NCBI GenBank assembly: GCA_963924565.1
Contig: OZ004612.1
Span: forward strand, 32,922,001 to 32,986,000
Source of the DNA: Ascidiella aspersa
Taxonomy: Eukaryota
Length of the DNA: 64,000 nt
Direction: 5' to 3'
Made by a program: the position numbers and the translations under genes. The notes beneath the pieces were generated by a model. That model did no database searches. It was not told where the DNA came from and worked only from the letters and a program-made list of their open reading frames with translations. Positions 14,050 to 63,000 of this stretch are shown in pieces (within the stretch, counting starts at the first letter, position 1; each line of letters begins with the position of its first letter).

Positions 14050-17000
14050 CTAGTCCAAGTAGCCAATCACGATGACGGTGAGGCTTTCGATCATGAGGCA
14101 GACTCCGACAGCTCCAAGCACCAAGGCTGAGATCTTCTTGGGAGATGAAATCTTCCGAGGATCAAGTTTGAGGAAGAAGATGCAGGGGAGAACGAAAACC
14201 AACATCGTGGACGCCGTCGCGCCTGCAACAATCAGGTCATTGTCACAAACAATCAGACATAGAATTGTGAAATAGCGTGCGATTAAATCGTAAAAACCCA
14301 AGTTGATACAGATGCAGTAAGAACCTACTTTGTGTATTTATTTAAAGTCAGCATTTTTAACAATAAAGATTTAAATGAAATTAATGAATCTTGCAGTCAA
14401 GATAAAAATAAATAATATTTCCTAAATGATTTTTATTTGTCAGTTGATTACACTCTTTATCACACATAAGTGACGATGTACGACAGAAAAATGAAAATAC
14501 TAAAGCGGTGTGACGTAGTAGGTATGACGCAACCAATTACCGATGATGCCGAACACTTCTCTGATGCTTGGGACGAAGATGACGAGAATATTGATGAAGG
14601 TGAGAAGAAAGAACATTATCCCGAGGTGAATCGCCCAAGAGAAGTCGCGGTTCGGAAACAACAAGAAGGTGAGGGCCTTGCGCGCCTACAAAACACACAC
14701 ACCAGAGTGAGGTTTGGTGGCGATTACAGGGGAACACACACTAGAGTGAGGTTTGGAGTCGATTACAGGGGAACACACACTAGAGTGAGCTTTGGTGTCG
14801 ATTACAGGGGAACACACACATCAGAGTGAGGTTTGGTGGCGATTACAGGGGAACACACACACAAGAGTGAGGTTTGGTGGCGATTACAGGGGAACACACA
14901 CTAGAGTGAGCTTTGGTGTCGATTTCAGGGGAACACACACTAGAGTGAGGTTTGGTGGCGATTACAGGGGAACACACACTAGAGTGAGCTTTGGTGTCGA
15001 TTTCAGGGGAACACACACACCAGAGTGAGGTTTGGCGGCGATTAAAGGGGAACACACACTAGAGTGAGCTTTGGTGTCGATTTCAGGGGAACACACACAC
15101 CAGAGTGAGGTTTGGTGGCGATTACAGGGGAACACACACTAGAGTGAGCTTTGGTGTCGATTTCAGGGGAACACACACACCAGAGTGAGGTTTGGCGGCG
15201 ATTACAGGGGAACACACACCAGAGTGAGCTTTGGTAGCGATTACAGGGGAACACACACCAGAGTGAGGTTTGGCGGCGATTACAGGGGAACACACACCAG
15301 AGTGAGCTTTGGTGGCGATTACAGGGGAACACACACTAGAGTGAGCTTTGGTGTCGATTTCAGGGGAACACACACACCAGAGTGAGGTTTGGCGGCGATT
15401 AAAGGGGAACACACACTAGAGTGAGCTTTGGTGTCGATTTCAGGGGAACACACACACCAGAGTGAGGTTTGGTGGCGATTACAGGGGAACACACACTAGA
15501 GTGAGCTTTGGTGTCGATTTCAGGGGAACACACACACCAGAGTGAGGTTTGGTGGCGATTACAGGGGAACACACACTAGAGTGAGGTTTGGAGTCGATTA
15601 CAGGGGAACACACACTAGAGTGAGCTTTGGTGTCGATTACAGGGGAACACACACTAGAGTGAGCTTTGGTGTCGATTTCAGGGAAACACACACACCAGAG
15701 TGAGGTTTGGTGGCGATTACAGGGGAACACACACTAGAGTGAGGTTTGGTGTCGATTACAGGGGAACACACACTAGAGTGAGGTTTGGTGGCGATTACAG
15801 GGGAACACACACTAGAGTGAGCTTTGGTGTCGATTTCAGGGGAACACACACACCAGAGTGAGGTTTGGCGGCGATTAAAGGGGAACACACACTAGAGTGA
15901 GCTTTGGTGTCGATTTCAGGGGAACACACACACCAGAGTGAGGTTTGGTGGCGATTACAGGGGAACACACACTAGAGTGAGCTTTGGTGTCGATTTCAGG
16001 GGAACACACACACCAGAGTGAGGTTTGGCGGCGATTAAAGGGGAACACACACTAGAGTGAGCTTTGGTGTCGATTTCAGGGGAACACACACACCAGAGTG
16101 AGGTTTGGCGGCAATTACAGAGGAACACACACACCAGAGTGAGGTTTGGCGGCGATTACAGGGGAACACACACACTAGAGTGAGGTTTGGTGGCAATTAC
16201 AGGAAAACACAGACACCAGAGTAAGGCTTGGTAGCAATTACAAGGAACACACACATCAGAGTGAGGTTTGGTGGCGATTACAGGGGAACACACACTAGAG
16301 TGAGCTTTGGTGTCGATTTCAGGGGAACACACACACCAGAGTGAGGTTTGGCGGCGATTACAGGGGAACACACACTAGAGTGAGCTTTGGTGTCGATTTC
16401 AGGGGAACATACACACTAGAGTGAGGTTTGGTGGCGATTACAGGGGAACACACACACCAGAGTGAGCTTTGGTGTCGATTTCAGGGGAACACACATACCA
16501 GAGTGAGCTTTGGCGGCAATTACAGGGGAACACACACACCAGAGTGAGGTTTGGCGGCGATTACAGGGCAACACACATCAGAGTGAGGTATGGTGGTGAT
16601 TACAGGGGAACACACATCAGAGTGAGGTATGGTGGTGATTAAAGGGGAACATACACACCAGAGTGAGGTTTGGTGGCGATTACAGGGGAACACACATCAG
16701 AGTGAGGTATGGTGGTGATTACAAGGAACATTTCGTAGCGATTTCAGGGGAACACACACACCAGAGTGAGGTTTGGTGGCGATTAAAGGGGAACATACAC
16801 ACCAGAGTGAGGTATAGTAGTGATTCTAAACACTTAAGATATTTTTTGAATACTTTAACACCTACCGGGAAATGCGTCAGGGGCACGGTTAGGATGACGG
16901 CGAATAGAACTGTGAGTCTGACGATCAAAGTCAAGATGTCACCGGGGTCGCTCAAACTGTACATCAGCAACATCTCAGCCTCCATCCAATCTAAGCAAAG

Positions 17001-20000
17001 ATGACGTCATATAGCAATGTGACGTCACACAGTAGTCAGGGTCACTCACTGTAGAAGGTGAGGTATCCGAAGAGGGCAGCCAGTGAGTAGAGAGCGAAGC
17101 AGAATCCGATCGAAGTGTTGGCGACTTTCTGCATCCGAGCAGCTGAGGGTCTGGGAAACAAGATGTTTGTAACAACAAGATGTTTGAAACAACAAGATGT
17201 TTGTAACAACAAGATGTTTGTAACAACAAGATGTTTGTAACAACAAGATGTTTGTAACAACAAGATGTTTGAAACAACAAGATGTTTGAAACAACAAGAT
17301 GTTTGAAACAACAAGATGTTTGTAACAACAAGATGTTTGTAACAACAAGATGTTTGTAACAACAAGATGTTTGTAACAACAAGATGTTTGTAACAACAAG
17401 ATGTTTGAAACAACAAGATGTTTGTAACAACAAGATGTTTGTAACAACAAGATGTTTGTAACAACAAGATGTTTGAAACAACAAGATGTTTGTAACAACA
17501 AGATGTTTGAAACAACAAGATGTTTGTAACAACAAGATGTTTGAAACAACAAGATGTTTGTAACAACAAGATGTTTGAAACAACAGGGGTTCAGCGGGTA
17601 TATGGAGGATTGAGCTACATCGTGTGTTTAATTTAAGTGTTCTGGTGGACCGAATCTGCCTTTCAAGTTTTGACAGTTCCACAAAATATAGCTTACTTGT
17701 GTGCGGCTAGTAAAGCAAGGATTAGCAGTTAGCCTTTGTAAGAGATTACCAAAGCTCATTCTTAACAAAACTGCACATTCACACCTTCAGGTTTCAGGTT
17801 GAAGAGATTTGTTAAATCGCTACATCTTATTAAATCACCCTAAAGGTTAATAATTACCTTGGAAACAAAAACAAGGATCGTATAATGCTTGTTTTAAACA
17901 CCAAAGAAAAAACAGCAGGTTTTCTGAGCGTATGACTGGATAGAAATTTCACAACTTTAATGAAAACCAGCAAGTAAAACACCAATCTTTAAGTTGTTTC
18001 TCACCTCTTTAGTTCTGCGTAGATTGGAAGCACCGCTGTGTGACAAACGAAAGAGAACGTCATAGTAGGGATCGAGTACGCCCACTGTTAACAAACAACA
18101 CATTAACATATGTGTGTGACGTCACAATCAATACAACTGCCAAATTTTTAAGCATAAAATCTGCTCTCCTTGTACTTTATTTTATGATCCCACATTCCAA
18201 CTCATCGGATTCAGTGGGAACACACAAAACAAGTGATATGAACCAAATGTGCACTTCAAGATTTGATTCTAATTGTATTTATAGTTTACAAGAATTAATT
18301 CGCTGAGGGTTTTGCTAACTGACTCTTAAAATATCTATGCTTCAGTTTAAAAAAGTCATTTTGAAATTACTTTTCAGTCTAGTTAATGCAAGTCATTGAC
18401 TTAAGTCCTTACGAACTGTGATGTTCACATTTCCCAACGTATAAAAAGTATAGGTTTCTTAGATTAGAGCAGTGGTTCTTAACCAGGGTTCGATCGAACC
18501 CTTGGGGTTCAACGCAGCTGTTTCAAGGGTTCGGCGAGAACGTCCTTGAAACATAAATGCTGTTATTTCAACCTAAATTCGAATATCTTTTATGCGCCAA
18601 GGTGCCATGTAACGTTATAAATTGAAAGTTCAGCCAAATTAACCTATGTAAATGCAAGTTTATAATTTGATGAAACGAATATTAAGCGAACATTTGGGAT
18701 TCGACGAAAGCTTGCAGAATGACATAGAGGTTCGACAGGTTACCAAAAGTCAAGAACCACTGGACTAGAGGAAAACTAAAAACAGCGTAATCACTGACCC
18801 GTGACGTGAACGCGAACGGTTCCGCTTGACAGACTTGCTCGCCGAACACTTCGTACAATTCCTCCGCTCGCTTCTCCATGGCAACCTGCATTGCGTCACT
18901 CTCGTTGTGTGACGTCAGGTTGTTGTACGTTGACGTCACCAACTCCGTCACGATCAGACCCGCCGATGACGTGACGTTATCGTCGTAGTGTGACGTCACA
19001 TTGCTGTGCATTGTCGAGTTGTCGTGTTCGAACAATGACTGGTCGAACAATGGACAAGGGATCTGGAACTTCTTGACAATGACCTGATTCAACAATAGAT
19101 GTTTATTACGTCACACATAGCATTTGTTCAATATGAAGATAAACGAGGGTTGATCGAAGTTAAGCCCACAATATTTTTGGAGCATTTAGTAAATGATATA
19201 ACCATGATATAACGACACGTTACTTTCATAAAGGTTTGAATTGATCGATTTGAGTAGTTTCTTGCCATTACAACAATTAGATCACTTGGATTGGAATATT
19301 CTCGCCTACTGAAGTCAAATTTCAGCGGGGTTTATGTTTGGTAGTGGGGAATCATGTTTTCATGTTGATAACGACTCACCACTCCTGTGAAGAAAAACAT
19401 GCACGATATTGAAAATCCGCTCGTGTATCCCAAGAACCCGATGTTCTTTAGGGTCGCCAGGGGCATCACTATTGTCAACGTCACAATAACAACAAGGTAG
19501 TCCCCGTTGATGTACCAAGACCTGTGACGTAACAAACAAGTTTCGGGAGCTTTCCCACTTTATTGATGACGTAGTTCACACTTTATTGATGACAAGGTCA
19601 AAGGACGGTTGGGGTGAGTCAGCGTAAAGCAACTTAAGTTCGGGAAACTGTGGCGTATTTTAAATGTTCGATTTACAGTTACAACGGATGACGTTTTAAT
19701 GCCACGCCTGAATCTTGCCAAAAATAAATAATTAACCAATATAAAATGTGCTTAACCACTTGAACAAATTTTATTTGCAAAATATCTATGAATGAAAAGC
19801 ATGTAATTAACCCTAACCCTAGCAAGATATTGTGGATTTCAGGTTGTACCAGGTATTGCGCAACATCTGACGTCACGCATCCCCTCTGACGTCACTCACC
19901 CGTCATTCTCCGACATTCCTGCCAGCGTCATAAGCACGTTCGGGAGTTCGTACTTTACGATGAAGAGGTAGCTGCTCATCGCCCCGATGTTCTGAAGCAA

Positions 20001-23000
20001 GATGCAGCAAGCAGCAGTGATCTGCGGGGTTACTGAAGGTCAGTAGGGGTATTTGGGGCTACTCCAGGTCAGCAGGGTAATTAGGGGTTACTCCAGGTCA
20101 GCAGGGTAATTAGGGGTTACTACAGGTCAGCAGGGCAATTAGGGGTTACTACAGGTCAGCAGGGTAATTAGGGGTTACTACAGGTCAGTAGGGGTATTAG
20201 GGGTTACTACAGGTCATTAGGGTAATTAGGGGTTTTCTACAAGTCAGTAGGGGTATTAGGGGTTACTCCAGGTGAGCAGGGGTTTCAGGGGTTACTACAG
20301 GTCAGTAGGGGTAATTCGGGGTTGCTCTAGGTCAGTAGGGTCATTAGGGTAATTAGGAGTTACTACAGCTCAGTCGGGTATTTGGGGGTACTACAGGTCA
20401 GTAGGGATATTAGGGGTTACTCCAGGTCATTAGGGATATTAGGGGTTACTCCAGGTCAGTCGGGGTATTTAGGGTTACTACCGGTAAGTAGAGGTATAAG
20501 GGGTTACTACAGGTCAGTGGGGATATTAGGGTTTACTACAGGTCAGTAGGGGTTTTAAGTCAGTGGGGTTAACATGTTAGAGGTTATTACAGGTCATTAG
20601 GGGTTTTAGGGGTTATTACAGGTCACTAGGGGTATTTGGGGTTACTACAGGTCAGTAGGGGTATTAGGGGTTACTACAGGTCAGTAAGGGTGTTAGGGTT
20701 TACTACAGATCAGTAAGTTTATGAAGGGTTACTATAGGTCAGTAAGGTTATTGAGGGTTATTAAAGGTCAGTTGGGTTAACTATTGAATTTTAAAAGGAC
20801 CAACTGAACAACATTTTTGGAGCATTGGTGCAAAGTGCTTTGGATGTGTATGTTGAGTACAAGTTGTGGTTGACGCACATTTCGACACGCATGAATTAAC
20901 ACACATAGAAACCTTAACATCATTCGCACTCTCGGTGTTTCCCCGCTCACGTCTGCGGCTTAAATGCGCGTTGCGCGTAAGAACAATGGGTAACAATGCT
21001 GCGGTTGTTTACTTAGACAACAATTGTGGGATTGTGATTCGCGCGAAGTTATTGTTTGTTTTGATGCTCGATGCGTACAAACGTTGATAAATATTTATTG
21101 TGATCTCACAAGTTACTCCATTGTAATGCACCTCGATGCTGAGCTTGCCAAACTAGCCCTGGTGCGTTGTTTCTAGTTTTACATGCAACGAAACCTTTCG
21201 CACAAAAAGAGCCTCCCAGACGTGACACGCGATAAACAATGTTTTTTTAAGGGTGTTGCAAAACAATATTGGGGAACCACCGTTGTAAGTTAACCCAACT
21301 ATACTGTTGTGTGTTTTAGGAGACCTGAATAACTTCCAAACCCTGTTATACGAGAAACCTCAATTACCGAACTTTTATGACAAGCAAGATAAAATACCAA
21401 ACTTTAAATGACATAAATTAAGCTCGAAATAACTGCTGTTGTTTAGAACTCAAAATATGATGGGACTTTAATCAGTCCAGAATAACAAAGTATAAAGTGT
21501 TTTTATAACATTCAGGAAACAGCGACAATGGCGACGGCGAGATTGCATCGTTCAAACAATCGCAAACAATCGATTTCCGCGCGAAACCTGGCATTTTCCC
21601 TTGTTGTTGTTTATGACATCATAGGTAAATATTTTCGCAATAATTGAGTTATTGTGGCGTGATTAAGGGAGCAATACCCTTAAATCAGGGGGTGATATTT
21701 GTGTTGGTGCTCAACGTCCATTGTTCCACGAGCAATAATTCGAGTCGTAAAAGACGTAAAAGGCGTTTTAATGTTGCGGTGAAATAATTAGGTTTGCGAT
21801 GTTGTAAACTGGGAGGCGGCAAGTGCTGCGGGTTTCTGGTAACATTTGTAAATTGAAAGCCAAGTGATTTATTTGTGGTCGGCAGATCTAGCGGGATATT
21901 TTAAATTTTGTTTCGAATTTTATCGAAGTAACTAATTTAAAAAAAAACCCTAAAACAAACACGTCACAGATCACGTGACGTAACATGATGGTCTGCGGGA
22001 ACACTGTCATGTTGGTGGCCACCGGTGTAAATATGAACAACCACCACATAACAGCCCCACTAACGTTCCACTCACCCTTCCAGGAAGTCCGAACGCGTTG
22101 AAGCCAAGTTTCTCGTAAGCCTTCACTCCTGTCTGGTCGCAAAGTATTAGGAGGAAGTGGATCGAGTAGAGAGCCACGATCGCCACCAGAACCATCATGA
22201 TGCTGCAATATAAACCACAGTTACACCAGAACCATCATGATGCTGCAATATAAACCACAGTTACACCAGAACCATCATAATGCTGCAATATAAACCACAG
22301 TTACACCAGAACCATCATGATGCTGCAATATAAACCACAGTTACACCAGAACCATCATAATGCTGCAATATAAACCACAGTTACACCAGAACCATCATAA
22401 TGCTGCAATATAAACCACAGTTACTATAAAGTTATCACCAAACTAGATCGGTACTTTTGTCATTGAATTTCAAATAATTTAGTAAATAAGCTGAAACACT
22501 TTGGGGAGTAAGGAATCTCCCGCAGACAATGAAATGTAAAAGAAACACACCTGCTTTCGTATCAGGTGATCTTAACAATAAATTATCTTTTTTTGGTTTA
22601 TTTACCGTGGCCGGAAACTTTATCCTGGCTTTACTCTGTTTATTCTTAATACAAAATATATTTTTAGGCTCAAGTCACTTTCCAAGTATTTATGGCAATT
22701 TATTTCTATAATTTGCTTATTTCTATAATTTGCGCATATTTTTTACTACAGTGTTTTAACAAATACTAAAATGTGCCTTTTCTATAAAACGTGCCTTTTT
22801 GGTGTGTTGTACAACTAAGACCAACTAAGTACAATTGTTGGAAGCTATTAATAATACTTTGGCAGTTTGACAATTTTAAACCAAATTAATTCGCTGGACG
22901 TACTTAGTAAAAGCTTGCATTAAATAATTACTGGCAATAGTGAACTATTACATAACCACAGAGCGACGTGTTTGTTTATTAGCAGATGGTAACCTCGTGT

Positions 23001-54094: not shown

Positions 54095-57000
54095 TCAACA
54101 AAACAAACGCGTAACAATGGCTGCGATTGTGACGTGGAAGCTGTAGACAATGGCTGAGTCGGTGACCACGTGACTAGTTCCAATATTTCTTGGGGTGGTG
54201 GCGGGTAACAGCGCCGCTGGTGGATAAACACAAGAAGTAAGCACTCTATGTTTAGATTGCGAAACAATTGTTGATGATAAATATGGTTTAGCGCATAGCG
54301 TGGTAAAGCTACTCAGTAATTTGACATCTGTCAGGAATATAGCAAATGTATAATACAACTCATGTGTCCGTGCTTGTACTCACAAAATGCAACTGTGGGA
54401 GAGGGCAGGCACTTCTCGTAAAGCACAAGTACGTCATCAATCGCTATGTCACCCTCGTATCCATTGTCTTGTGTGATTTGCGCCTCGAATACTATCTGTG
54501 ACGTAACAACAATAGACGATTAGTTACGCGTAGTTACATTTAACTCCAGGTTTATGTTTGTAGTTGTTATTTTGTGAAAAAGTAAGAAAGTTATTTTTTC
54601 AGTCACCCAAAAAGCAACGGTTTCTGCATCCAACAGCTGTGTTACACTGATTAGAAGTTAATTATGTTAGTATCTATATATTGACTGACTTGGTAGGCGG
54701 TGCCGGCGAGCAGATTGACCCTCGCTTGCAGCCAGGAGTCCGCTTGCGGTCCGGTCCTTGACCAAACCTCCGTCATGTTGTCAGTCCCCACAAAAGCTTG
54801 CAGAACCCGCAACTTGCCTGGAATACGTGATGTAAACTTTAAATAATACGTTTCTTTGACTGATTCTATGCAAGTGTGATTCATTATTTTCTCATTTATC
54901 CCTGTTATTGCAAACCAATTAAACAAATAGTGGATTACCGATGTGCCTTCCCTTCATGTGGTAAACGAACTTGAGGCAATGTTCGAACGAACTTCGGTCG
55001 TAAAATGTCGGGCTCAACAACCGCGCTCTGGCGCCCTTGTGCGGCGTAGAAGATTCGATGAACATATATCCGCCTGTGACGTAACAAACACGTTGAAATA
55101 GGTGCTTGTGACGCAACAGACACGCTTGAATAAACTAGCCATCACATATGATATGTGCACATCTGTGGAAAGGAAGTTAAAAATACTACACCAGGATGAA
55201 CTTAAGACAAAGTGCTAGGGTTTCATTTGTAAATTATAAGTGAAATGAAAGCTGCGATCGCTGCCACGTTTCAAACCTTGGTCTCGTTGCTGAAGTTTCA
55301 TGAGCAAGTTGAAACTTTATAATCTGGTTAGTTGCTGATCTAAGACTGTTTATAAAAACAGATAAAACATAAAATCATTTATTAAAATTTACAAGTTAGT
55401 TGCTGGCTGTTACTTTAAATTACGCAAAGGTTGAGCGCGTGTCTTACTGAACACCCCTGTTGTACCCCACACCCCCAAATAACCCCCAAACACCCCCTAC
55501 CGTGTGGGTCGGAGTTGGTCTTGTCCTGCCTGGGGCCGGTGTTTGGGGTTCGTCTTGCTTGATTGCCCACGTAATTCCAAACCCAATCAAACTCATCAGC
55601 GACATCTTGTGAGAAGGAGCATATCTTGGCGCTGTCGAAGGGACAGAAGAAGGGGCGACCTGCAAATAACCCGGGAAAACACCTTTAACCCCGTGGATCA
55701 CAAAATAACGACAAAATATTTACCGCTTGGGTGAAGCGTTGGCCCCACTCCGTTCACATCCCCTGCAAAATGTGGTATGCGGTCAAATAAATGTGGTATG
55801 CGGTCAACACACCCTTATGCTTAACCTACTTTCACTCCTGACGTCAATCATCGTCTTGCTTGCGTCACCGTAACCTAGCAACGTCTTGGGGGTGACCTCT
55901 ACTTCGTACTGGCCGCTCACAAGGTCATTCAGCTTGCACGTGACCAGCTCCCCGTAGTTGAGCGTAGCTGTGGAAGTGAACGTGTTAGTTTGACAATAAG
56001 TTCCAGGGGTCTGGGGTTCGAACCTGGCAGGAGTCTGTGCTTTTCCGTCCATGGAACCGGCGTCGATTCAGGTCCAGTGTTCCCGTCACGCTTCATCGCT
56101 TTCCCGATCTCCCGCCATCTCACTCTGCGAATCACGTGACATACGTCATTATGTACTATGACGTCACTGCGTTCCTAAGGTTTAGTTCGATCCAAACTAT
56201 ATTCTCCTATGTTTATGACATCATAACAGCTACCTGTATTCCAGAACGGGGTCAACAGAGTCCGGGTTCTTTTGCGTCCAGGAGAGAAGGTAAGCGAAAG
56301 TTCCGGGTGCAGAATCGACCTGCGGGAAAGCTCTGAGCGAATCCCTTCGCAATATCTCGGGCGGGAAAGCGCGGCCTGTGAGGTTTATCGAGCATCTTCC
56401 GCTTCCAACCTCGTTGTAAACATCACAAGTGTACAAGCCGTAGTTAGCTGGGCTCAGGTTCAACAACTCGATCCCGTGCGACGATTTGTAGCGGGCGATC
56501 GTCACGTTGTCTTTCTTCCAAACGTAAGTCAAGTTGCTGCAAAAAAAGTAAGTCCAACAGGACATACGCTTATACAGGTTTGCGTCACAATAAACGCACC
56601 TGAACGGACTTGCGTCACAGCATACGCACTTGAATGGACTTGCGTCACAACGTACGCACCTGAACGGACTTGCGTCAACAACATACGCACCAGAACGGAC
56701 TTGAGTCACAACATACGCACCTGAACGGACTTGCGTCACAACATACGCACCTGAACGGACTTGCGTCAACAACATACGCACCAGAACGGACTTGCGTCAC
56801 AACATACGCACCTGAACGGACTTGCGTCACAACATACGCACCTGAACGGACTTGCGTCAACGACATACGCACCTGAACGGACTTGCGTCAACGACATACG
56901 CACCTAAACGGACTTGCGTCACAACATACGCACCTGAATGGACTTGCGTCAACGACATACGCACCTAAACGGACTTGCGTCACAACATACGCACCTGAAC

Positions 57001-60000
57001 GGACTTGCGTCAACAACATACGCACCTGAACGGACTTGCGTCAACGACATACGCACCTGAACGGACTTGCGTCAACGATATACGCACCTGAACGGATTTG
57101 CGTCAACGACATACGCACCTGAACGGACTTGCGTCAACGATATACGCACCTGAACGGACTTGCACTAACGACGCACCTGAACGGACTTGCGTCAACGACA
57201 TACGCAACTAAACGGACTTGCGTCAACGACATACGCACCTGAACGGACTTGCTTCAACGACATACGCAACTAAATGGACTTGCGTCAACGACTTATGCAC
57301 CTGAACGGACTTGCGTCAAAGACATACGCACCTGAACGGACTTGCGTCAACGACATACGCAACTAAACGGATTGGCGTCAACAACATACGCAACTAAATG
57401 GACTGGCGTCAACGTCATACGCACCTGAACGGACTTGCGTCACAACATACGCACCTGAAAGGACTTGCGTCACAACATACGCACCTGAACGGACTTGCGT
57501 CAACGACATACGCACCTGAACGGACTTGCGTCAACGACATACGCACCTAAACGGACTTGCGTCACAACATACGCACCTGAACGGACTTGCGTCAACGACA
57601 TACGCACCTAAACGGACTTGCGTCACAACATACGCACCTGAACGGACTTGCGTCAACAACATACGCACCTGAACGGACTTGCGTCACAACATACGCACCT
57701 GAACGGACTTGCGTCAACGACATACGCACCTAAACGGAATTGTGTCACAACATACGCATCTGAACGGACTTGCGTCAACGACATACGCACCTAAACGGAC
57801 TTGCGTCACAACATACGCACCTAAACGGACTTGCGTCACAACATACGCACCTGAACGGACTTGCGTCAACGACATACGCACCTAAACGGACTTGCGTCAA
57901 CAACATACGCACATGAACGGACTTGCGTCAACGACATACGCACCTGAACGGACTTGCGTCAACGACATACGCACCTAAACGGACTTGCGTCACAACATAC
58001 GCACCTGAACGGACTTGCGTCAACGACATACGCACCTAAACGGACTTGCGTCACAACATACGCACCTGAACGGACTTGCGTCAACAACATACGCACCTGA
58101 ACGGACTTGCGTCAACGACGTTGCAAGTGAGGGTTTGGCTTGTTCCTGTTCTTTTCCTGATGTTGGTGAAAGGTTGATCAACTGTCGGAGCATCTGTTGA
58201 ATCAAATAAATGTTTGTAATTGGGCGTCCGTTACGAGATATCAAATTATCGATCACTGAGTTGGTGTCGGTGTTGTGCAAAAGTGTAAGCGATTCCATAG
58301 TTATCTTAATGTCCAAGGCTGTGTTTCGGCAACTTAAAGGAGTGTGTTAATGGTAGGATTGCATTTATTGTAATGCAGATTAGCATTAACAACCTCATTG
58401 TTTAGCATTTCTTCCTTTTGATTTACGGAGGATTAGTAACCTATATTTATCCCGAATACGAACCCTAAGTTATCGCGCCTCGCCCACTTTACAATCCCAA
58501 GCGCAAAAATCAAATCCGCTCAACACGTGGTTCTCACTTTGACCTCGACATTATAATTCGACCTTGAAGAATGGCGCAAAGCCACTAAAGAGAATCTTAT
58601 TTTGCCTCCAAATGTTCACTTCACAGCCGCTAATTGTGTCTGTGTGAGTTTTATGTTGAACTCACAAAGAACTTGGAGCTCGACCGAGTCTTCAAACCCT
58701 CGCTTCCTTAAACTGCTGAATCCGTTGAACCTTGCTGGAGAGCAGAAGTAGAATCCCGCGTCTTCACGACTCACACTGGAGATGTTTAGGCGGCCGTCCT
58801 GTCAAGCAACGACAGACAAGCTGGTGTGTTGTTCGTTTACAAATAGTAAAAACAATATTTGTAAGTAAAGTCAAAAAGTAAAACAGCTTTTAGCCCTATC
58901 TAAAACATATTGATGAAATTTCAGACCATGAAAATAATCAAGCTTTTGTTGTTGTAACCTAGCAACCAGTGACGTCACCCACCTTAACAACGTCCTCCAC
59001 GTTTCCGCTCGGCATCGTCAGGTTTTCCTCCCGTCGCCAAGCAACCGACGCGCGCGGTGTTCCCATGGCAACGCACTCCAGGCTCGTTTGCGCCCCCTCG
59101 CGGGCAACCACCGTCGCAACTTTAGTTCGAACGCTAGAGGGCGCTACAACGAACAATAAACCCCCAATGTGAGAAAAGTATTGTATTTATTTGTTTTTGC
59201 GGAATCTTTTGGTTTTGAACCTGATTTGATTTGCATCGAATGAAAGCGACATTTGCTTCGTTTGGTTTCACTTAATTCGATTCCATCCAAGGAATCAGGT
59301 TTGTGAGATCTTGGCTCATAAATAAATAATGATTCTCTGCAACTGAGTTCATGTTCACAACAAAAAGCAAAAGCCTAGAATCGTGCTTTAGCGCACAAAT
59401 AACAGTCGATCGCAACAGCTGGAATCAATGGGTTAAAGTTTGCTTTGTATGACGTCATTACCAATAAAAAGCGATTACGTCAACAACCTAAACCACGACA
59501 TTACAAACAAGTGTTGACGCTATTTGACCTGAGTCTGAAACAAAGTGTTTACGCTTTAAGAATATTTGACCTGAGTCTGGACTTATGGTGATTGTGGCGG
59601 ACACCGAAAGGTTGGTGTTTCCCCGAAGTCTTCCCTCGCAAACATACTGGCCGTAGTCGTCACGTGACAAGTCCCCGATCTGTAGACGACTGTCAACAAA
59701 CAAACACCTTAGTTACATCAGATTGTGACGTCACAGCACATCGTACCTTGACTTCTCGGGGAAGGTGAATCCCCTTTCCACCTCCTCTTCATCAAGTGAC
59801 GTCACGATGACGTTTCTAACGATTCGATCGAGAACGCGGATTCTTTCGTAGTTTGAGTTCTGTGGGAGTTTGTAAAAATCTTAATTCCAACCTTTTTGAC
59901 AAACCAAACAAAAATGTAACTAGATTGCCACACGCATAATACATTTCCTCTAAGTCAGGGGTTCCCAACCTTTTTACGATCTCGTACCACTTGGACGCTC

Positions 60001-63000
60001 TGTATTGCCATGCGTACCACTTCTTGCGGAACAACTAATTTGCTAGACCAGTGTTTCTTAACCTTTTTGTAAATTTTCTTATGCCTTGCACCGCCAAAAT
60101 TGGTTAATGTTTTCGTAAACCCCATGAAAAGCAATTCGGCATTTTCAATTAAATATCACTAAGACAACTTGAAAATAGTCAAGTCTGTTGTCGGTCGCGC
60201 GAAGCGCGAAAAAAATAGGTTGAATTGGCGCTAAAGTACAATTTTGCAGGGCAATTTGTTGAAAAACATTAGGGCAATTTGTCGGAAAACCTGTTTTAAA
60301 CCAGCAATTCAGCATGTTTCATGGCTACATTAATTTTCAGAAATAAATACAACGTATCGCCTAAAAGTCTTGTTAAAGGTATAAGGAACTAACTCGAAAT
60401 GCAAAAAAGGGGACATTTGGACACTTTTGAGCGTCCTCGGTGGACCATTCAGTTTTCTTGAAAAAAGAGGACATATGGTAGGCCTAACTATGCTCCTTGT
60501 CGTCAATTGACATGGCCTGCATTTTAAAGATCGCATTGTTTCGAAACAACAGGAATAGTTACGTAACAATAAGAATGGGCTTCGGGGAAAATTATTTTAT
60601 GTAAACAAAATATAAAGTTGTGAATGCAGGTTTTGTGAAAAAAAACGGAAGCTACTCGCGTACCACCTGAAAAACCTTCGCGTACCACTAGTGGTACGCG
60701 TACCACAGGTTGGGAACCCCTGCTCTAAGTGGTTTGCTGTGATGTCACAAATAAAAATACATTCATTAACTTTAAACAATTTAGAACAATATTGTTCGAC
60801 AATCATGAACATTACACAATAATTGTATCAAGAACGCTTTAGTTTTCCTAGTCCTGAAGTAAAATTAGTGAAAAAGTCGCAGCGCATTGCTTATACGTTA
60901 TGTTATATATTTTTGTTTGAGAATGCGGTGAACATATGTTGTCAAAGCAACTAGATGGCCAGGTTATAGATGGTTGGTCCCCTTGGTAAAATAACGGTGA
61001 CGTCATAACATAACGTAAATAAGAACAAATAATCCTCGGGACTTGTTATGGGTATACACTCTACTACTTCGGAAATAAATTGGCGGGCTTTCAAAACAAT
61101 TGAGGGGTGAAAAAGATTTTCTGGCTATGATTGCTATTTTTTTGGTCTTTTCGCCGAAAAAGTTCTCACAAAGTTCAAACAAAGATTTAGGGGAGGAACA
61201 CCCACGTGTTTGCTATATCCAATGAGTGATACGCATTCATGTGGAAGAGGGCTAATGCGTGCTTATAAGGCAACTCCGAGATAACATATGAGCGGGTTCA
61301 AACAAAGAGTTTGACATACCAGTTTAAACCATGAATACTCGAGCTCAGAATAGGGCGAAGCGTCAGCGTGGCACGTGATCTTTGCTTCGCTGTGAACAAC
61401 CAATCGGAGGTCGTCACGCCTGAGTTCCGGTGTGATCCAGTAAATCATTGGACCGATGTCTGAACAAAGTTAAGTTTAAGTCGGTTTTAATGAGTTAAGT
61501 TAGTTGTCGAACTTGTGCTGACTTACATCTCACGGCGAGTTTAGTTGATTTTCGCACAGGAAGTCCAACGCCGTTGCTTCCAACACAGAAGTAAGTTCCA
61601 CTGTCCGACAACTGCACGCTGTTGATGCGGAGAGTTGCCCTGAAACAAACACATGCACGATAAGTGAAAAACACTTTAATTTACACACTCGGTTCAACGT
61701 TAGCTGTTTTATTGTTCGCTACATATTTCTTGAAAGTAGTTTTCTCACAAACGTTTCTTCGCTTTATTTTGTTCCAAACCTTTTTCCCCCGACCTCGGCA
61801 CTTGGAGGAAGTTCCCCGTCTAGTCGGACCCACGTGATCGTCGGGCGCGGGAAGCCGTTTATCACGTCACAAGTGATCTTGACGCGGTCTCCTACGTCAA
61901 CAACGAGGTTCTCGGAAGTCCTAAGGGCGATTTCAGGAGGAACTGCAGCGAGCAAGTGGAAGTTAAGGTTAGTAACCTGCATTAACCTGCATTAACCTAA
62001 TTGTGCTTTCTTACCTATCTGCGATGTGTAGGTGAAGTTGGCTCGCGTGTCCTTGACGTTGTAAGCCTTCTCACCTCCGATAGAAGCTCGGCAGATGTAG
62101 TTGCCGTAATCGTTAGAGTTGGCGTTCTTGATCTTAAGCACAACTGAAGAAATCCCGGGTTTGTAGGGGTCAGATGTGCGTACACTGGGACCTAAAGGGT
62201 TAATAAGGGTCAGATGTGCGTACACTGGGACCTAAAGGGTTAATATGGGTCACATGTAAAAGCAGTGTTGATAGTAAAATATTTAAAAGCAGTGGTTAGG
62301 GTTTGTGTTAAACACGCATGGGTGATGAAATTTTACCGTTCATCTTCCCAGGTTTGATTTTCCTTCCGTCTTTCCACCAAGTAAATGTTGCCGCTGGATT
62401 ACTCCGAACTTCGCAACTTAAATAAACTGTATTTTCGAACCAAATGCTGCTTCGCGATGTTTCAGCTCTGCTTGGGTGGATCGACAATTTCGGGGTGTCC
62501 AGGTCTGTGACGACATAATAACATATTATGGAGCGCGGCGACAGTTAGTAACATCTTGATCTTAAGTAACCCCGCACTCACATAGTACTTTGATGGTCTT
62601 GGTGGTGACCTCAAGTAACCCCACACTCACATAGTACTTTGATGGTCTTGGTGGTGACCTCAAGTAACCCCGCACTCACATAGTACTTTGATGGTCTTGG
62701 TGGTGAGAGCAGGATTGCCGATCCCATTGTCGGCTCTGCAAGTTACTCTTCCTCCTTCGGTCCTCCTGATCTTCCTGATGTTCAAGCGAGGATTCCAAGG
62801 ATCCAACTTCCTCCTGACGATAACGATATTATTATATTTGTGTAATCCCGGTAAAGGTTGTGATATTTGTCTAGTGTTGTGCCAACCCTACTGCACACTA
62901 AACTGTGGTTTAAACCCAAACCAACGTGGTCTACCGAGCAAGGTTTTTAAGATAACAAGTAACCAATTTTTACCATCACGGCTTGACGTCATAATTGCCA

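What the first reader, a model, noticed from the sequence alone, without database searches (positions are those of the whole stretch)
56570..58118. An intron made of about 50 tandem copies of its own 5' splice site
Seen: the minisatellite unit is the last ~20 nt of the Ig6 exon plus the donor (ttcag|GTGCGT), so about 50 near-identical donors fill the intron. Reading past the first donor gives ...FRCVCC-TGA, so only the first copy yields protein. Inference: the spliceosome must pick the exon-proximal copy among dozens of near-identical decoys nearer the acceptor. This implies strict exon-definition or first-come selection, or a copy-number-tunable leak to nonsense-mediated decay (NMD).
Basis: partly seen in the sequence, partly recalled or inferred. 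Interest (0 to 1): 0.8.

Follow-up and report, generated by a model that had tools for sequence, protein, structure and literature searches.

The report
Splice-donor minisatellite filling an MDGA intron
One intron of a sea-squirt MDGA-type cell-adhesion gene is filled almost entirely by 50 tandem copies of its own exon/intron boundary; the array is real, but arrays of this kind are already known from lancelets ("mirages") and several human genes, and no RNA data could show which copy is spliced.

Summary
The gene is MDGA-like and lies on the minus strand. Its intron 58096..56537 (1560 nt) splits the sixth Ig domain.

- **The array:** 97% of the intron is a 30/31-nt minisatellite (58116..56580, 50 units). 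Each unit is the last 20 nt of the upstream exon plus the first 11 nt of the intron.
- **Donor copies:** 30 units carry CAG|GTGCGT (the first, presumed authentic, copy plus 29 exact copies). Ten carry TAG|GTGCGT and ten are damaged.
- **Consequence of a wrong choice:** any later copy runs into the same TGA stop.
- **Exon boundary:** splicing from the first donor aligns without a gap to the Styela clava and fish MDGA2 proteins.
- **Origin:** the unit occurs nowhere else in the 308.6-Mb genome, so it arose in place.
- **Assembly check:** contig depth in one public run (10.3x) fits the assembled copy number (9.9x).

That the first donor must be chosen follows from homology, not from RNA: the one RNA run laid gave no reads. 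An NMD leak is untested.

The kind is known. Examples are human F7 IVS7, IFI6, CBS, LMNB2 and PDGF, and the amphioxus "mirages". This scan has already noted the same thing at other loci of this genome, and I found three more in this window.

Verdict: a new member of a known kind, of modest interest.

The parts
58097..58193 (-). Exon a (97 nt). It encodes (Y)APTVDQPFTNIRKRTGTSQTLTCNVVDASPF plus two bases of a split Ser codon: the first half of Ig domain 6. Its last 20 nt are the exonic part of repeat unit 1.
   Evidence: Sequence. The acceptor is ttgattcaacag|ATGCTCC. It aligns to Styela clava MDGA2-like P0064 and fish MDGA2 P0108 at columns 680-710 of A1.
58091..58099 (-). Presumed authentic 5' splice site CAG|GTGCGT. 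The cut lies between 58097 and 58096.
   Evidence: This is the only donor that keeps the frame open and keeps the Cys-to-Trp spacing of the orthologues.
56537..58096 (-). Intron of 1560 nt, phase 2, lying between the B and C strands of Ig6.
56580..58116 (-). Minisatellite of 50 units of 30/31 nt with a 61-nt higher-order period and a recurring ABCBC block pattern. The unit is 20 nt of exon end plus 11 nt of intron start. There are 29 exact and 10 TAG-variant decoy donors.
   Evidence: It is locus-specific within the genome.
58081..58083 (-). In-frame TGA, reached whenever donor 1 is skipped.
   Evidence: the stop falls at the same codon for donors 2-50.
56594..56602 (-). Last decoy donor (unit 50, CAG|GTGCGTTTAT). 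With the real acceptor it would make a 63-nt intron.
   Evidence: One search places G+1 at 56599; sequence.
56537..56579 (-). Non-repeat 3' tail of the intron: a degenerate unit remnant, a branch-point-like CTTAC, the tract TTTTTTT, and the acceptor GCAG|.
   Evidence: read by eye. The branch-point assignment is inferred.
56233..56536 (-). Exon b (304 nt). It encodes (S)NLTYVWKKDN...CSINLTG (second half of Ig6) and then AFPPE...LSWTQKNPDSVDPVLEYR (the region after Ig6, taken by me as the start of the FN3 domain). It ends at ACAG|GTAGCT.
   Evidence: Pfam Ig_2/I-set hits below the curated cut-offs. 39% identity to P0064 residues 600-707. Alignment A1.

Best explanation
This is a locus-born 'mirage'-type minisatellite.

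**Origin.** A 31-nt segment spanning the donor junction of an originally very short intron was duplicated in tandem. Subtracting the array leaves about 54 nt. Slippage or unequal exchange then expanded the duplication to about 50 units, including block duplications. The extra copies all lie downstream of the first donor and so sit inside the intron.

**Splicing.** The gene stays functional because the spliceosome joins the most upstream donor (58097|58096) to the single real acceptor (56537|56536), whose branch point and pyrimidine tract lie outside the array. The 39 intact decoys are most likely silent. At most, chiefly through copies 2-4, they give a minor class of transcripts with a premature stop.

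**Role.** The array itself probably has no function. It is tolerated rather than used.

**Shown versus inferred.** Shown: the array anatomy, its in-situ origin, the stop codon, and the homology of the first-donor junction. Inferred: actual donor usage, silence of the decoys, the ancestral intron length, and neutrality.
For: - Array anatomy and unit composition.
- All genomic matches to the unit fall inside this intron (21 of 21; 47 of 47, none elsewhere).
- Every decoy leads to the same TGA.
- Exon a end, one split codon and exon b start align without a gap to P0064 (Styela clava MDGA2-like) and fish MDGA2 P0108/P0130. The A-x-P motif encoded by the repeated 20 nt is conserved, so the exon part is ancestral coding sequence.
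- The gene is collinear with P0064 from Ig1 to MAM with open exons, so it looks functional.
- Run X1 contigs reach into both array edges. An array unitig has depth 514 against 49.8 in the flanks (10.3x), and the assembly predicts 9.9x.
- Raw DNA reads of X8 and contigs of X3 also hold array sequence.
- Units near the acceptor are the most degenerate, as is usual at array edges.
- Precedent: in F7 IVS7 only the most upstream of identical donors is used; IFI6, CBS, LMNB2 and PDGF have the same layout (PMC1557585). Amphioxus mirages do not disturb regular splicing (PMC3087553).
- Three further junction-spanning arrays lie in this window.
Against: - There is no RNA evidence at all. RNA run X9 laid nothing on four exons, and no spliced protein fragment turned up in the word search.
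- Unit 2 is identical to unit 1 over 31 nt, so no local sequence marks the authentic donor. In human IFI6 and CBS the next two copies are in fact used (PMC1557585), so a leak is quite possible.
- Most introns of this gene are short. Pairing across the intron might therefore favour the last decoy, 63 nt from the acceptor, which the model must assume does not happen.
- X1 may be the very sample the assembly came from. X8 depth in the array is only about a third of the flanks, so the copy number in other individuals is open.
Confidence: 0.72

Rival explanations
1. Regulated or copy-number-dependent unproductive splicing. A sizeable share of transcripts use decoy donors, mostly copies 2-4 or the acceptor-proximal copy 50. 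They acquire the TGA and are degraded, so array length would tune MDGA output.
For: - 29 decoys are identical to the authentic nine-base core, and unit 2 is identical over 31 nt.
- All decoys give a premature stop upstream of a later junction.
- Human IFI6 and CBS use their second and third copies, and the CBS VNTR has been associated with reduced enzyme activity (PMC1557585 text and reference list).
- X8 depth hints that the array differs between individuals.
Against: - No RNA data were obtained.
- In F7, LMNB2 and PDGF only the first donor is used (PMC1557585).
- There is no sign of selection on the decoys. Loss of G+1 (5 of 50 units) is similar to the most variable neutral positions.
- Such arrays are common in this genome, in unrelated genes. 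That fits a by-product better than a tuned device.
Confidence: 0.15
2. Assembly artefact. The array is over-expanded or mis-built, and the true intron is short or holds only a few units.
For: - Minisatellites are often mis-assembled; the amphioxus BflGb6 mirage was (PMC3087553).
- X8 short-read depth in the array is about 1.5x against about 4.3x in the flanks, with none over 56910-57151.
Against: - X1 unitig depth ratio of 10.3 matches the 9.9 predicted from the assembled array.
- X1 contigs run from both flanks into the array with no differences.
- X3 holds array 61-mers at 2-4 times its single-copy depth.
- Almost all 151-mers of the array are unique, so it can be assembled from long reads.
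- The X8 shortfall is explained equally well by allelic rearrangement of unit order combined with a 95% identity cut-off.
Confidence: 0.04
3. The intron was created by the duplication itself (Rogers-type intron gain by tandem duplication across an AGGT), rather than being an old intron later filled by a repeat.
For: - The unit contains AG|GT, and the intron is 97% exon-derived repeat.
- Ebner et al. propose that mirages can seed new introns (PMC3087553).
Against: - The acceptor, pyrimidine tract and branch-point-like motif lie in non-repeat sequence (56537-56579). Exon b does not begin with the unit's post-AG sequence.
- Two single-exon ORF fragments from other organisms (P0072, P0136) start their homology at exactly the same column as exon b. 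This suggests a shared intron position.
Confidence: 0.05
4. The array is functional as an RNA or DNA element in its own right: a U1 snRNP landing pad, a structured RNA, or a regulatory repeat.
For: About 40 U1-complementary sites lie within 1.5 kb. There is no direct evidence.
Against: - The array RNA folds worse than shuffled controls (z = +2.4).
- There is no Rfam match.
- The unit is unique to one locus.
- The many identical units and the degenerate edge units suggest ongoing minisatellite turnover rather than a constrained element.
Confidence: 0.04

Closest known systems
Human F7 intron 7 37-bp VNTR (Borensztajn et al. 2006, PLoS Genet, PMC1557585)
   Same: The first monomer of the minisatellite spans the exon/intron boundary, so the authentic donor is followed by identical pseudo-donors. 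All of them must join one acceptor, and only the most upstream gives the normal mRNA.
   Different: F7 has 5-9 units of 37 bp with only 4 nt of exon per unit. Here there are 50 units of 30/31 nt with 20 nt of exon per unit. F7 donor usage was shown with 50 minigene constructs; nothing was tested at RNA level here. F7 is mammalian, this is an ascidian.
Human IFI6 (6-16), CBS intron 13 31-bp VNTR, LMNB2 and PDGF junction minisatellites (as reviewed in PMC1557585)
   Same: Each reiterates the splice donor through an exon/intron-spanning minisatellite. IFI6 has 25 pseudo-sites. CBS has a 31-bp unit with 15-20 repeats. The LMNB2 repeat covers most of an intron.
   Different: In IFI6 and CBS the two pseudo-sites next to the authentic donor are also used. 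Whether that happens here is unknown. The copy number here (50) is higher than in any of these.
Amphioxus 'mirages' (Adh3, globin genes BflGb6/BflGb9; Ebner et al. 2010, PMC3087553, citing Canestro et al. 2002)
   Same: They are minisatellite-like tandem duplications of exon/intron boundaries in an invertebrate chordate, at both donor and acceptor sides. They are locus-specific, unstable in length, show concerted evolution with diverged edge units, and regular splicing is kept.
   Different: The amphioxus globin units are 150-160 bp with 2-6 copies (Adh3 units are 10-72 bp). Here the host is a tunicate, with 50 copies filling the intron. My literature searches found no description of such arrays in tunicates; that is not proof that none exists.
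Recursive-splicing ratchet points (juxtaposed AG|GT)
   Same: Every unit holds ...TTCAG|GTGCGT. Splicing donor 1 to an internal AG would regenerate the same donor.
   Different: The units lack a pyrimidine tract before the AG, unlike this gene's real acceptors. The intron is only 1.5 kb. This is a resemblance in sequence logic only.

Membership tests
Junction-spanning ('mirage') minisatellite | Head-to-tail array of 10-160-bp units | tested here: met
   50 units of 30/31 nt with 90% matches.
Junction-spanning ('mirage') minisatellite | The first or last unit spans a true exon/intron boundary, so the splice site is reiterated | tested here: met
   Unit 1 is 20 nt of exon a plus 11 nt of intron. 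The boundary is fixed by gap-free homology to P0064, P0108 and P0130, not by cDNA.
Junction-spanning ('mirage') minisatellite | Arose in place, and is not a member of a dispersed repeat family | tested here: met
   All hits in the 308.6-Mb genome lie inside this array.
Junction-spanning ('mirage') minisatellite | Length or structure varies between individuals | tested here: inconclusive
   X8 reads cover the array at about one third of flank depth, with a gap at 56910-57151. X3 ratios are lower than the assembly predicts. X1 matches the assembly. Short reads and contigs cannot size the array.
Junction-spanning ('mirage') minisatellite | Regular splicing is kept: the authentic site is used | not testable with these tools
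F7-type 'most upstream donor wins' selection | Pseudo-donors are functional but silent; knocking out donor n activates donor n+1 | not testable with these tools
   This needs minigenes or natural variants with RNA. Only the sequence precondition is shown, namely identical donors.
Intron gain by tandem duplication (Rogers model) | The intron runs from the GT of the first copy to the AG of the last copy, with no unique 3' splice region | tested here: not met
   The acceptor, T-tract and CTTAC lie in non-repeat sequence at 56537-56579, and exon b does not start with unit sequence.
MDGA (MAM domain-containing GPI anchor protein) gene | Six Ig domains, then FN3, then MAM, collinear with known MDGA proteins | tested here: met
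   tblastn of Styela clava MDGA2-like P0064 is collinear from 63158 to 54937. Pfam finds MAM in two exons, one at 41.7 bits (cut-off 26.4) and one just below it at 23.4, and Ig hits below the cut-offs in exon b. Source names. The GPI signal and the N-terminus were not examined.

The most novel reading that the evidence does not exclude
In this sea squirt, splice-junction minisatellites may not be random accidents. They could be the product of a mutation process that preferentially amplifies junctions of very short introns. They would be tolerated because the spliceosome follows an absolute 'outermost site' rule: first donor, last acceptor. That rule would override proximity even when a perfect decoy sits an ideal 63 nt from the acceptor. 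The MDGA array, with 39 intact decoys, would then be one of the strongest natural tests of 5' splice-site choice outside mammals. A milder version is that decoy use gives a heritable, copy-number-dependent reduction of MDGA output.
Probability: 0.12. Interest if true: 0.6.

Novelty: new member of a known kind. Interest (0 to 1): 0.3.

Why it matters
If the first donor really is used exclusively, this intron is an extreme natural experiment. There are 29 exact and 10 near-exact copies of a good 5' splice site between the real donor and the only acceptor, and the last lies at the ideal short-intron distance. That would extend the 'most upstream donor wins' behaviour, shown for human F7, to a tunicate whose introns are mostly short.

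It also adds to the evidence, from this window and from other notes of this scan, that junction-spanning minisatellites are frequent in this genome. This matters for gene annotation: gene predictors can pick a wrong copy. It also matters for ideas on intron growth, since a roughly 54-nt intron has become 1.56 kb.

Taken alone, however, it is one more example of a described phenomenon.

Tried and rejected
- **RNA evidence.** The single read-laying run put RNA run X9 on 55700-59300 and laid no read from about 6% of the run. This is no test of expression or splicing.
- **Spliced protein fragments.** The word search with exon b found nothing.
- **Orthologous introns.** Two metagenome scans gave nothing or only bacterial Ig-repeat ORFs without introns.
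- **RNA structure hiding the decoys.** The ACGCA/TGCGT complementarity that I saw by eye does not give a stable fold (z = +2.4 against shuffles). Rejected.
- **Known RNA families.** None in the whole window.
- **Dispersed repeat or transposon origin.** Rejected.
- **Paralogue comparison.** Exon b has no second copy in the genome.
- **Bacterial promoter scan.** It returned 16 'sites' in the array. These only echo the repeat unit and mean nothing in an animal gene.
- **Selection on decoy GTs.** Loss of G+1 in 5 of 50 units is not distinguishable from other variable positions. No conclusion.
- **Joined model.** The spliced (joined) protein model was never sent to any search tool. Exons were searched and aligned one by one. 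Only a local frame check in a script joined them.
Full report
**What is there**

The finding lies in a gene on the minus strand. tblastn of the Styela clava protein named 'MAM domain-containing glycosylphosphatidylinositol anchor protein 2-like' (P0064, name) against the window gives collinear matches from 63158 down to 54937. These run through the Ig domains and the post-Ig region into the MAM domain. Pfam finds MAM in two exons, one above the curated cut-off (41.7 bits) and one just below it (23.4 bits), and Ig half-domains below the cut-offs in exon b. The closest named relative is a sea squirt, and earlier notes of this scan also call this genome a sea squirt. I did not establish the species.

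The genome holds 308.6 Mb in 75 contigs, and the window is C6:32922001-32986000.

**Anatomy**

- Exon a is 58193..58097 (97 nt). It encodes APTVDQPFTNIRKRTGTSQTLTCNVVDASPF and ends ...GTTGACGCAAGTCCGTTCAG.
- The intron runs 58096..56537 (1560 nt, phase 2).
- Exon b is 56536..56233. It begins (AG|C = Ser) NLTYVWKKDN and ends ACAG|GTAGCT.
- Tandem Repeats Finder reports a 31-nt array at 56580..58116 with 50.3 copies, 90% matches and a 61-nt higher-order period.
- Parsing on the coding strand gives 50 units of 30/31 nt (one of 27), each with a donor-like site.
- Unit 1 is the last 20 nt of exon a plus the first 11 nt of the intron. Unit 2 is identical to it over all 31 nt.
- The nine-base cores are 30 CAG|GTGCGT (the presumed authentic donor plus 29 decoys), 10 TAG|GTGCGT and 10 damaged.
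- The array makes up 1517 of the 1560 intron bases. The remaining 43 nt (56579..56537) hold a degenerate unit remnant, a CTTAC branch-point-like motif, a T7 tract and the acceptor GCAG| (the branch point is my inference).
- Reading through donor 1 gives ...SPFRCVCC and then TGA at 58083..58081. Use of any of donors 2-50 meets this same stop.

**Is the exon boundary right?**

No cDNA could be obtained, so I used homology, exon by exon. In alignment A1 exon a ends at column 710 and exon b starts at column 712. Exactly one column lies between them, for the split codon. There are no gaps against the Styela clava protein or the two fish MDGA2 proteins (P0108, P0130).

The Cys-to-Trp spacing of the Ig domain is 15 residues in all of them. 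The A-x-P motif encoded by the repeated 20 nt is also shared (ASP, AKP, AHP). The repeated exon end is therefore ancestral coding sequence, and first donor to real acceptor is the junction that homology demands.

Two short ORF fragments from other organisms (P0072, P0136) begin their homology at the same column as exon b. This suggests an old, shared intron position, but that is an inference.

The joined protein was not sent to any search tool.

**Is the array real and local?**

- A 91-nt piece of the array matches 21 places in the genome, all inside this intron.
- A 27-nt core with up to 3 mismatches matches 47 places, all inside C6:32978590-32980113, which is window 56590-58113. There are none elsewhere and none in the reversed control.
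- In public run X1, contigs enter the array from both flanks without differences. One array unitig (57509-57599) has depth 513.8 against 49.8 for the flanks, a ratio of 10.3. The mean multiplicity of its 31-mers in the assembled window is 9.9. X1 may be the assembled sample itself, so this checks the assembly rather than giving an independent individual.
- Run X3, under another organism label but with identical flanks, holds array 61-mers at 2-4 times its single-copy depth.
- Raw Illumina reads of X8 cover the array at about 1.5x against about 4.3x in the flanks, with none at 56910-57151. Nearly all 151-mers there are unique. This hints that unit order or number differs in that animal, but with a 95% identity cut-off it proves nothing.

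**How it most likely arose**

Without the array the intron would be about 54 nt (11 + 43). Several other introns of this gene are roughly 60-170 nt, as far as I could read their junctions. In so short an intron a 31-nt tandem duplication will often include a junction.

The unit-type string ABCBCDECBBCFCGABCBCCHGIJKLMNOKPQRQCABSBCCGTAGUAVW shows three things:
- many identical units;
- a recurring ABCBC block, which indicates block duplication;
- diverged units in the middle and at the acceptor-side edge.

This is the usual picture of minisatellite turnover. The exon-side edge unit equals the consensus, as expected if it is held by selection on the coding sequence and the donor.

**How it most likely works**

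Only donor 1 gives protein. By analogy with human F7 intron 7, I take the first donor to be the one used, with the decoys silent or nearly so. In F7, a 37-bp minisatellite reiterates the donor, the pseudo-donors are functional, and only the most upstream is ever selected (Borensztajn et al. 2006, PMC1557585).

The same paper records that in IFI6 (6-16) and CBS the two copies next to the authentic donor are also used. Unit 2 here is identical to unit 1, so a minor leak into stop-containing transcripts is plausible.

Nothing in the sequence marks donor 1 apart from what lies more than 20 nt upstream. Decoy 50 would make a neat 63-nt intron with the real acceptor. The choice of donor 1 is therefore not trivial, but it is untested here.

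A hairpin idea (ACGCA/TGCGT) failed: the RNA folds worse than shuffles (z = +2.4). There are no Rfam matches.

**Comparison with what is known**

[quoted passage not shown] In amphioxus it is described under the name 'mirages' (Adh3 and globin genes), at both donor and acceptor sides, with length instability and regular splicing kept (Ebner et al. 2010, PMC3087553).

The term 'mirage' came to me from earlier notes of this scan, and I checked it in that paper. My searches found no description of such arrays in tunicates, but absence from that library is weak evidence.

**Context in this genome**

The scan has already reported junction minisatellites at several other loci of this genome. I found three more in this window.

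| Location | Unit and copies | What is repeated | Evidence |
|---|---|---|---|
| 62706..62557, same MDGA gene | 49 nt x3.1 | Donor CTAT\|GTGAGTG, three copies | |
| 62257..62167, same MDGA gene | 40 nt x2.3 | Acceptor CCCTTTAG\|, two copies | |
| 22424..22184, neighbouring amino-acid-transporter-like gene (named from my reading of its ORFs) | 40 nt x6 | Acceptor TTGCAG\|, six copies | |

Two other large arrays of the transporter-like gene (39 nt x51 and 17 nt x25) are purely intronic. With introns this short I see no need for a junction-targeted mutation process, but I did not test that genome-wide.

**What could not be done**

- Read laying had one call, and its RNA run gave no reads.
- The metagenome scans returned only bacterial Ig repeats.

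**Verdict**

The array is a new member of a known kind, and interest is modest (0.3).

Noticed in passing
window 62557-62706 (minus strand): The same MDGA gene has a 49-nt unit in 3.1 copies, made of the last 24 nt of the Ig1-end exon (...TTKTIKVL) plus 25 nt of intron. This gives three copies of the donor CTAT|GTGAGTG. Reading through the first runs into TGA. The real acceptor tcacag|ACCTGGAC lies just downstream.
   Followed up: partly
window 62167-62257 (minus strand): The same gene has a 40-nt unit in 2.3 copies, made of 15 nt of intron end (TTATTAACCCTTTAG) plus 25 nt of exon start. This gives two copies of the acceptor. The upstream copy would put a TAA in frame. Homology to P0064 and P0108 fits the downstream copy.
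   Followed up: partly
window 22184-22424 (minus strand): A neighbouring gene that I read as an amino-acid transporter has six copies of a 40-nt unit: 21 nt of intron end with TTGCAG| plus 19 nt of exon start. Only the last copy continues into the exon (...[13 protein letters not shown]...).
   Followed up: partly
window 14695-16825 and 17157-17585 (minus strand): There are two more large minisatellites in introns of the transporter-like gene: 39 nt x51, starting about 40 nt after the donor CCG|GTAGGT, and 17 nt x25, ending about 10 nt before the acceptor TTTCCCAG|. Neither includes a junction. Not every array here is junction-spanning.
   Followed up: partly
window 58489-58590: Runs X8 and X1 show loose ends on both sides of this roughly 100-nt stretch of the upstream intron. 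This looks like an insertion/deletion allele or a repeat copy.
   Followed up: no
window 56456 (inside exon b): One low-depth 151-nt record of run X3 (organism label B) matches 56340-56456 and then continues with 34 unlike letters. It could be a structural variant, a chimeric read, or a different gene structure in that sample.
   Followed up: no
window 20026-20779: A degenerate 29-nt array (about 76-79% matches) lies in another intron of the transporter-like gene. Its relation to junctions was not examined.
   Followed up: no
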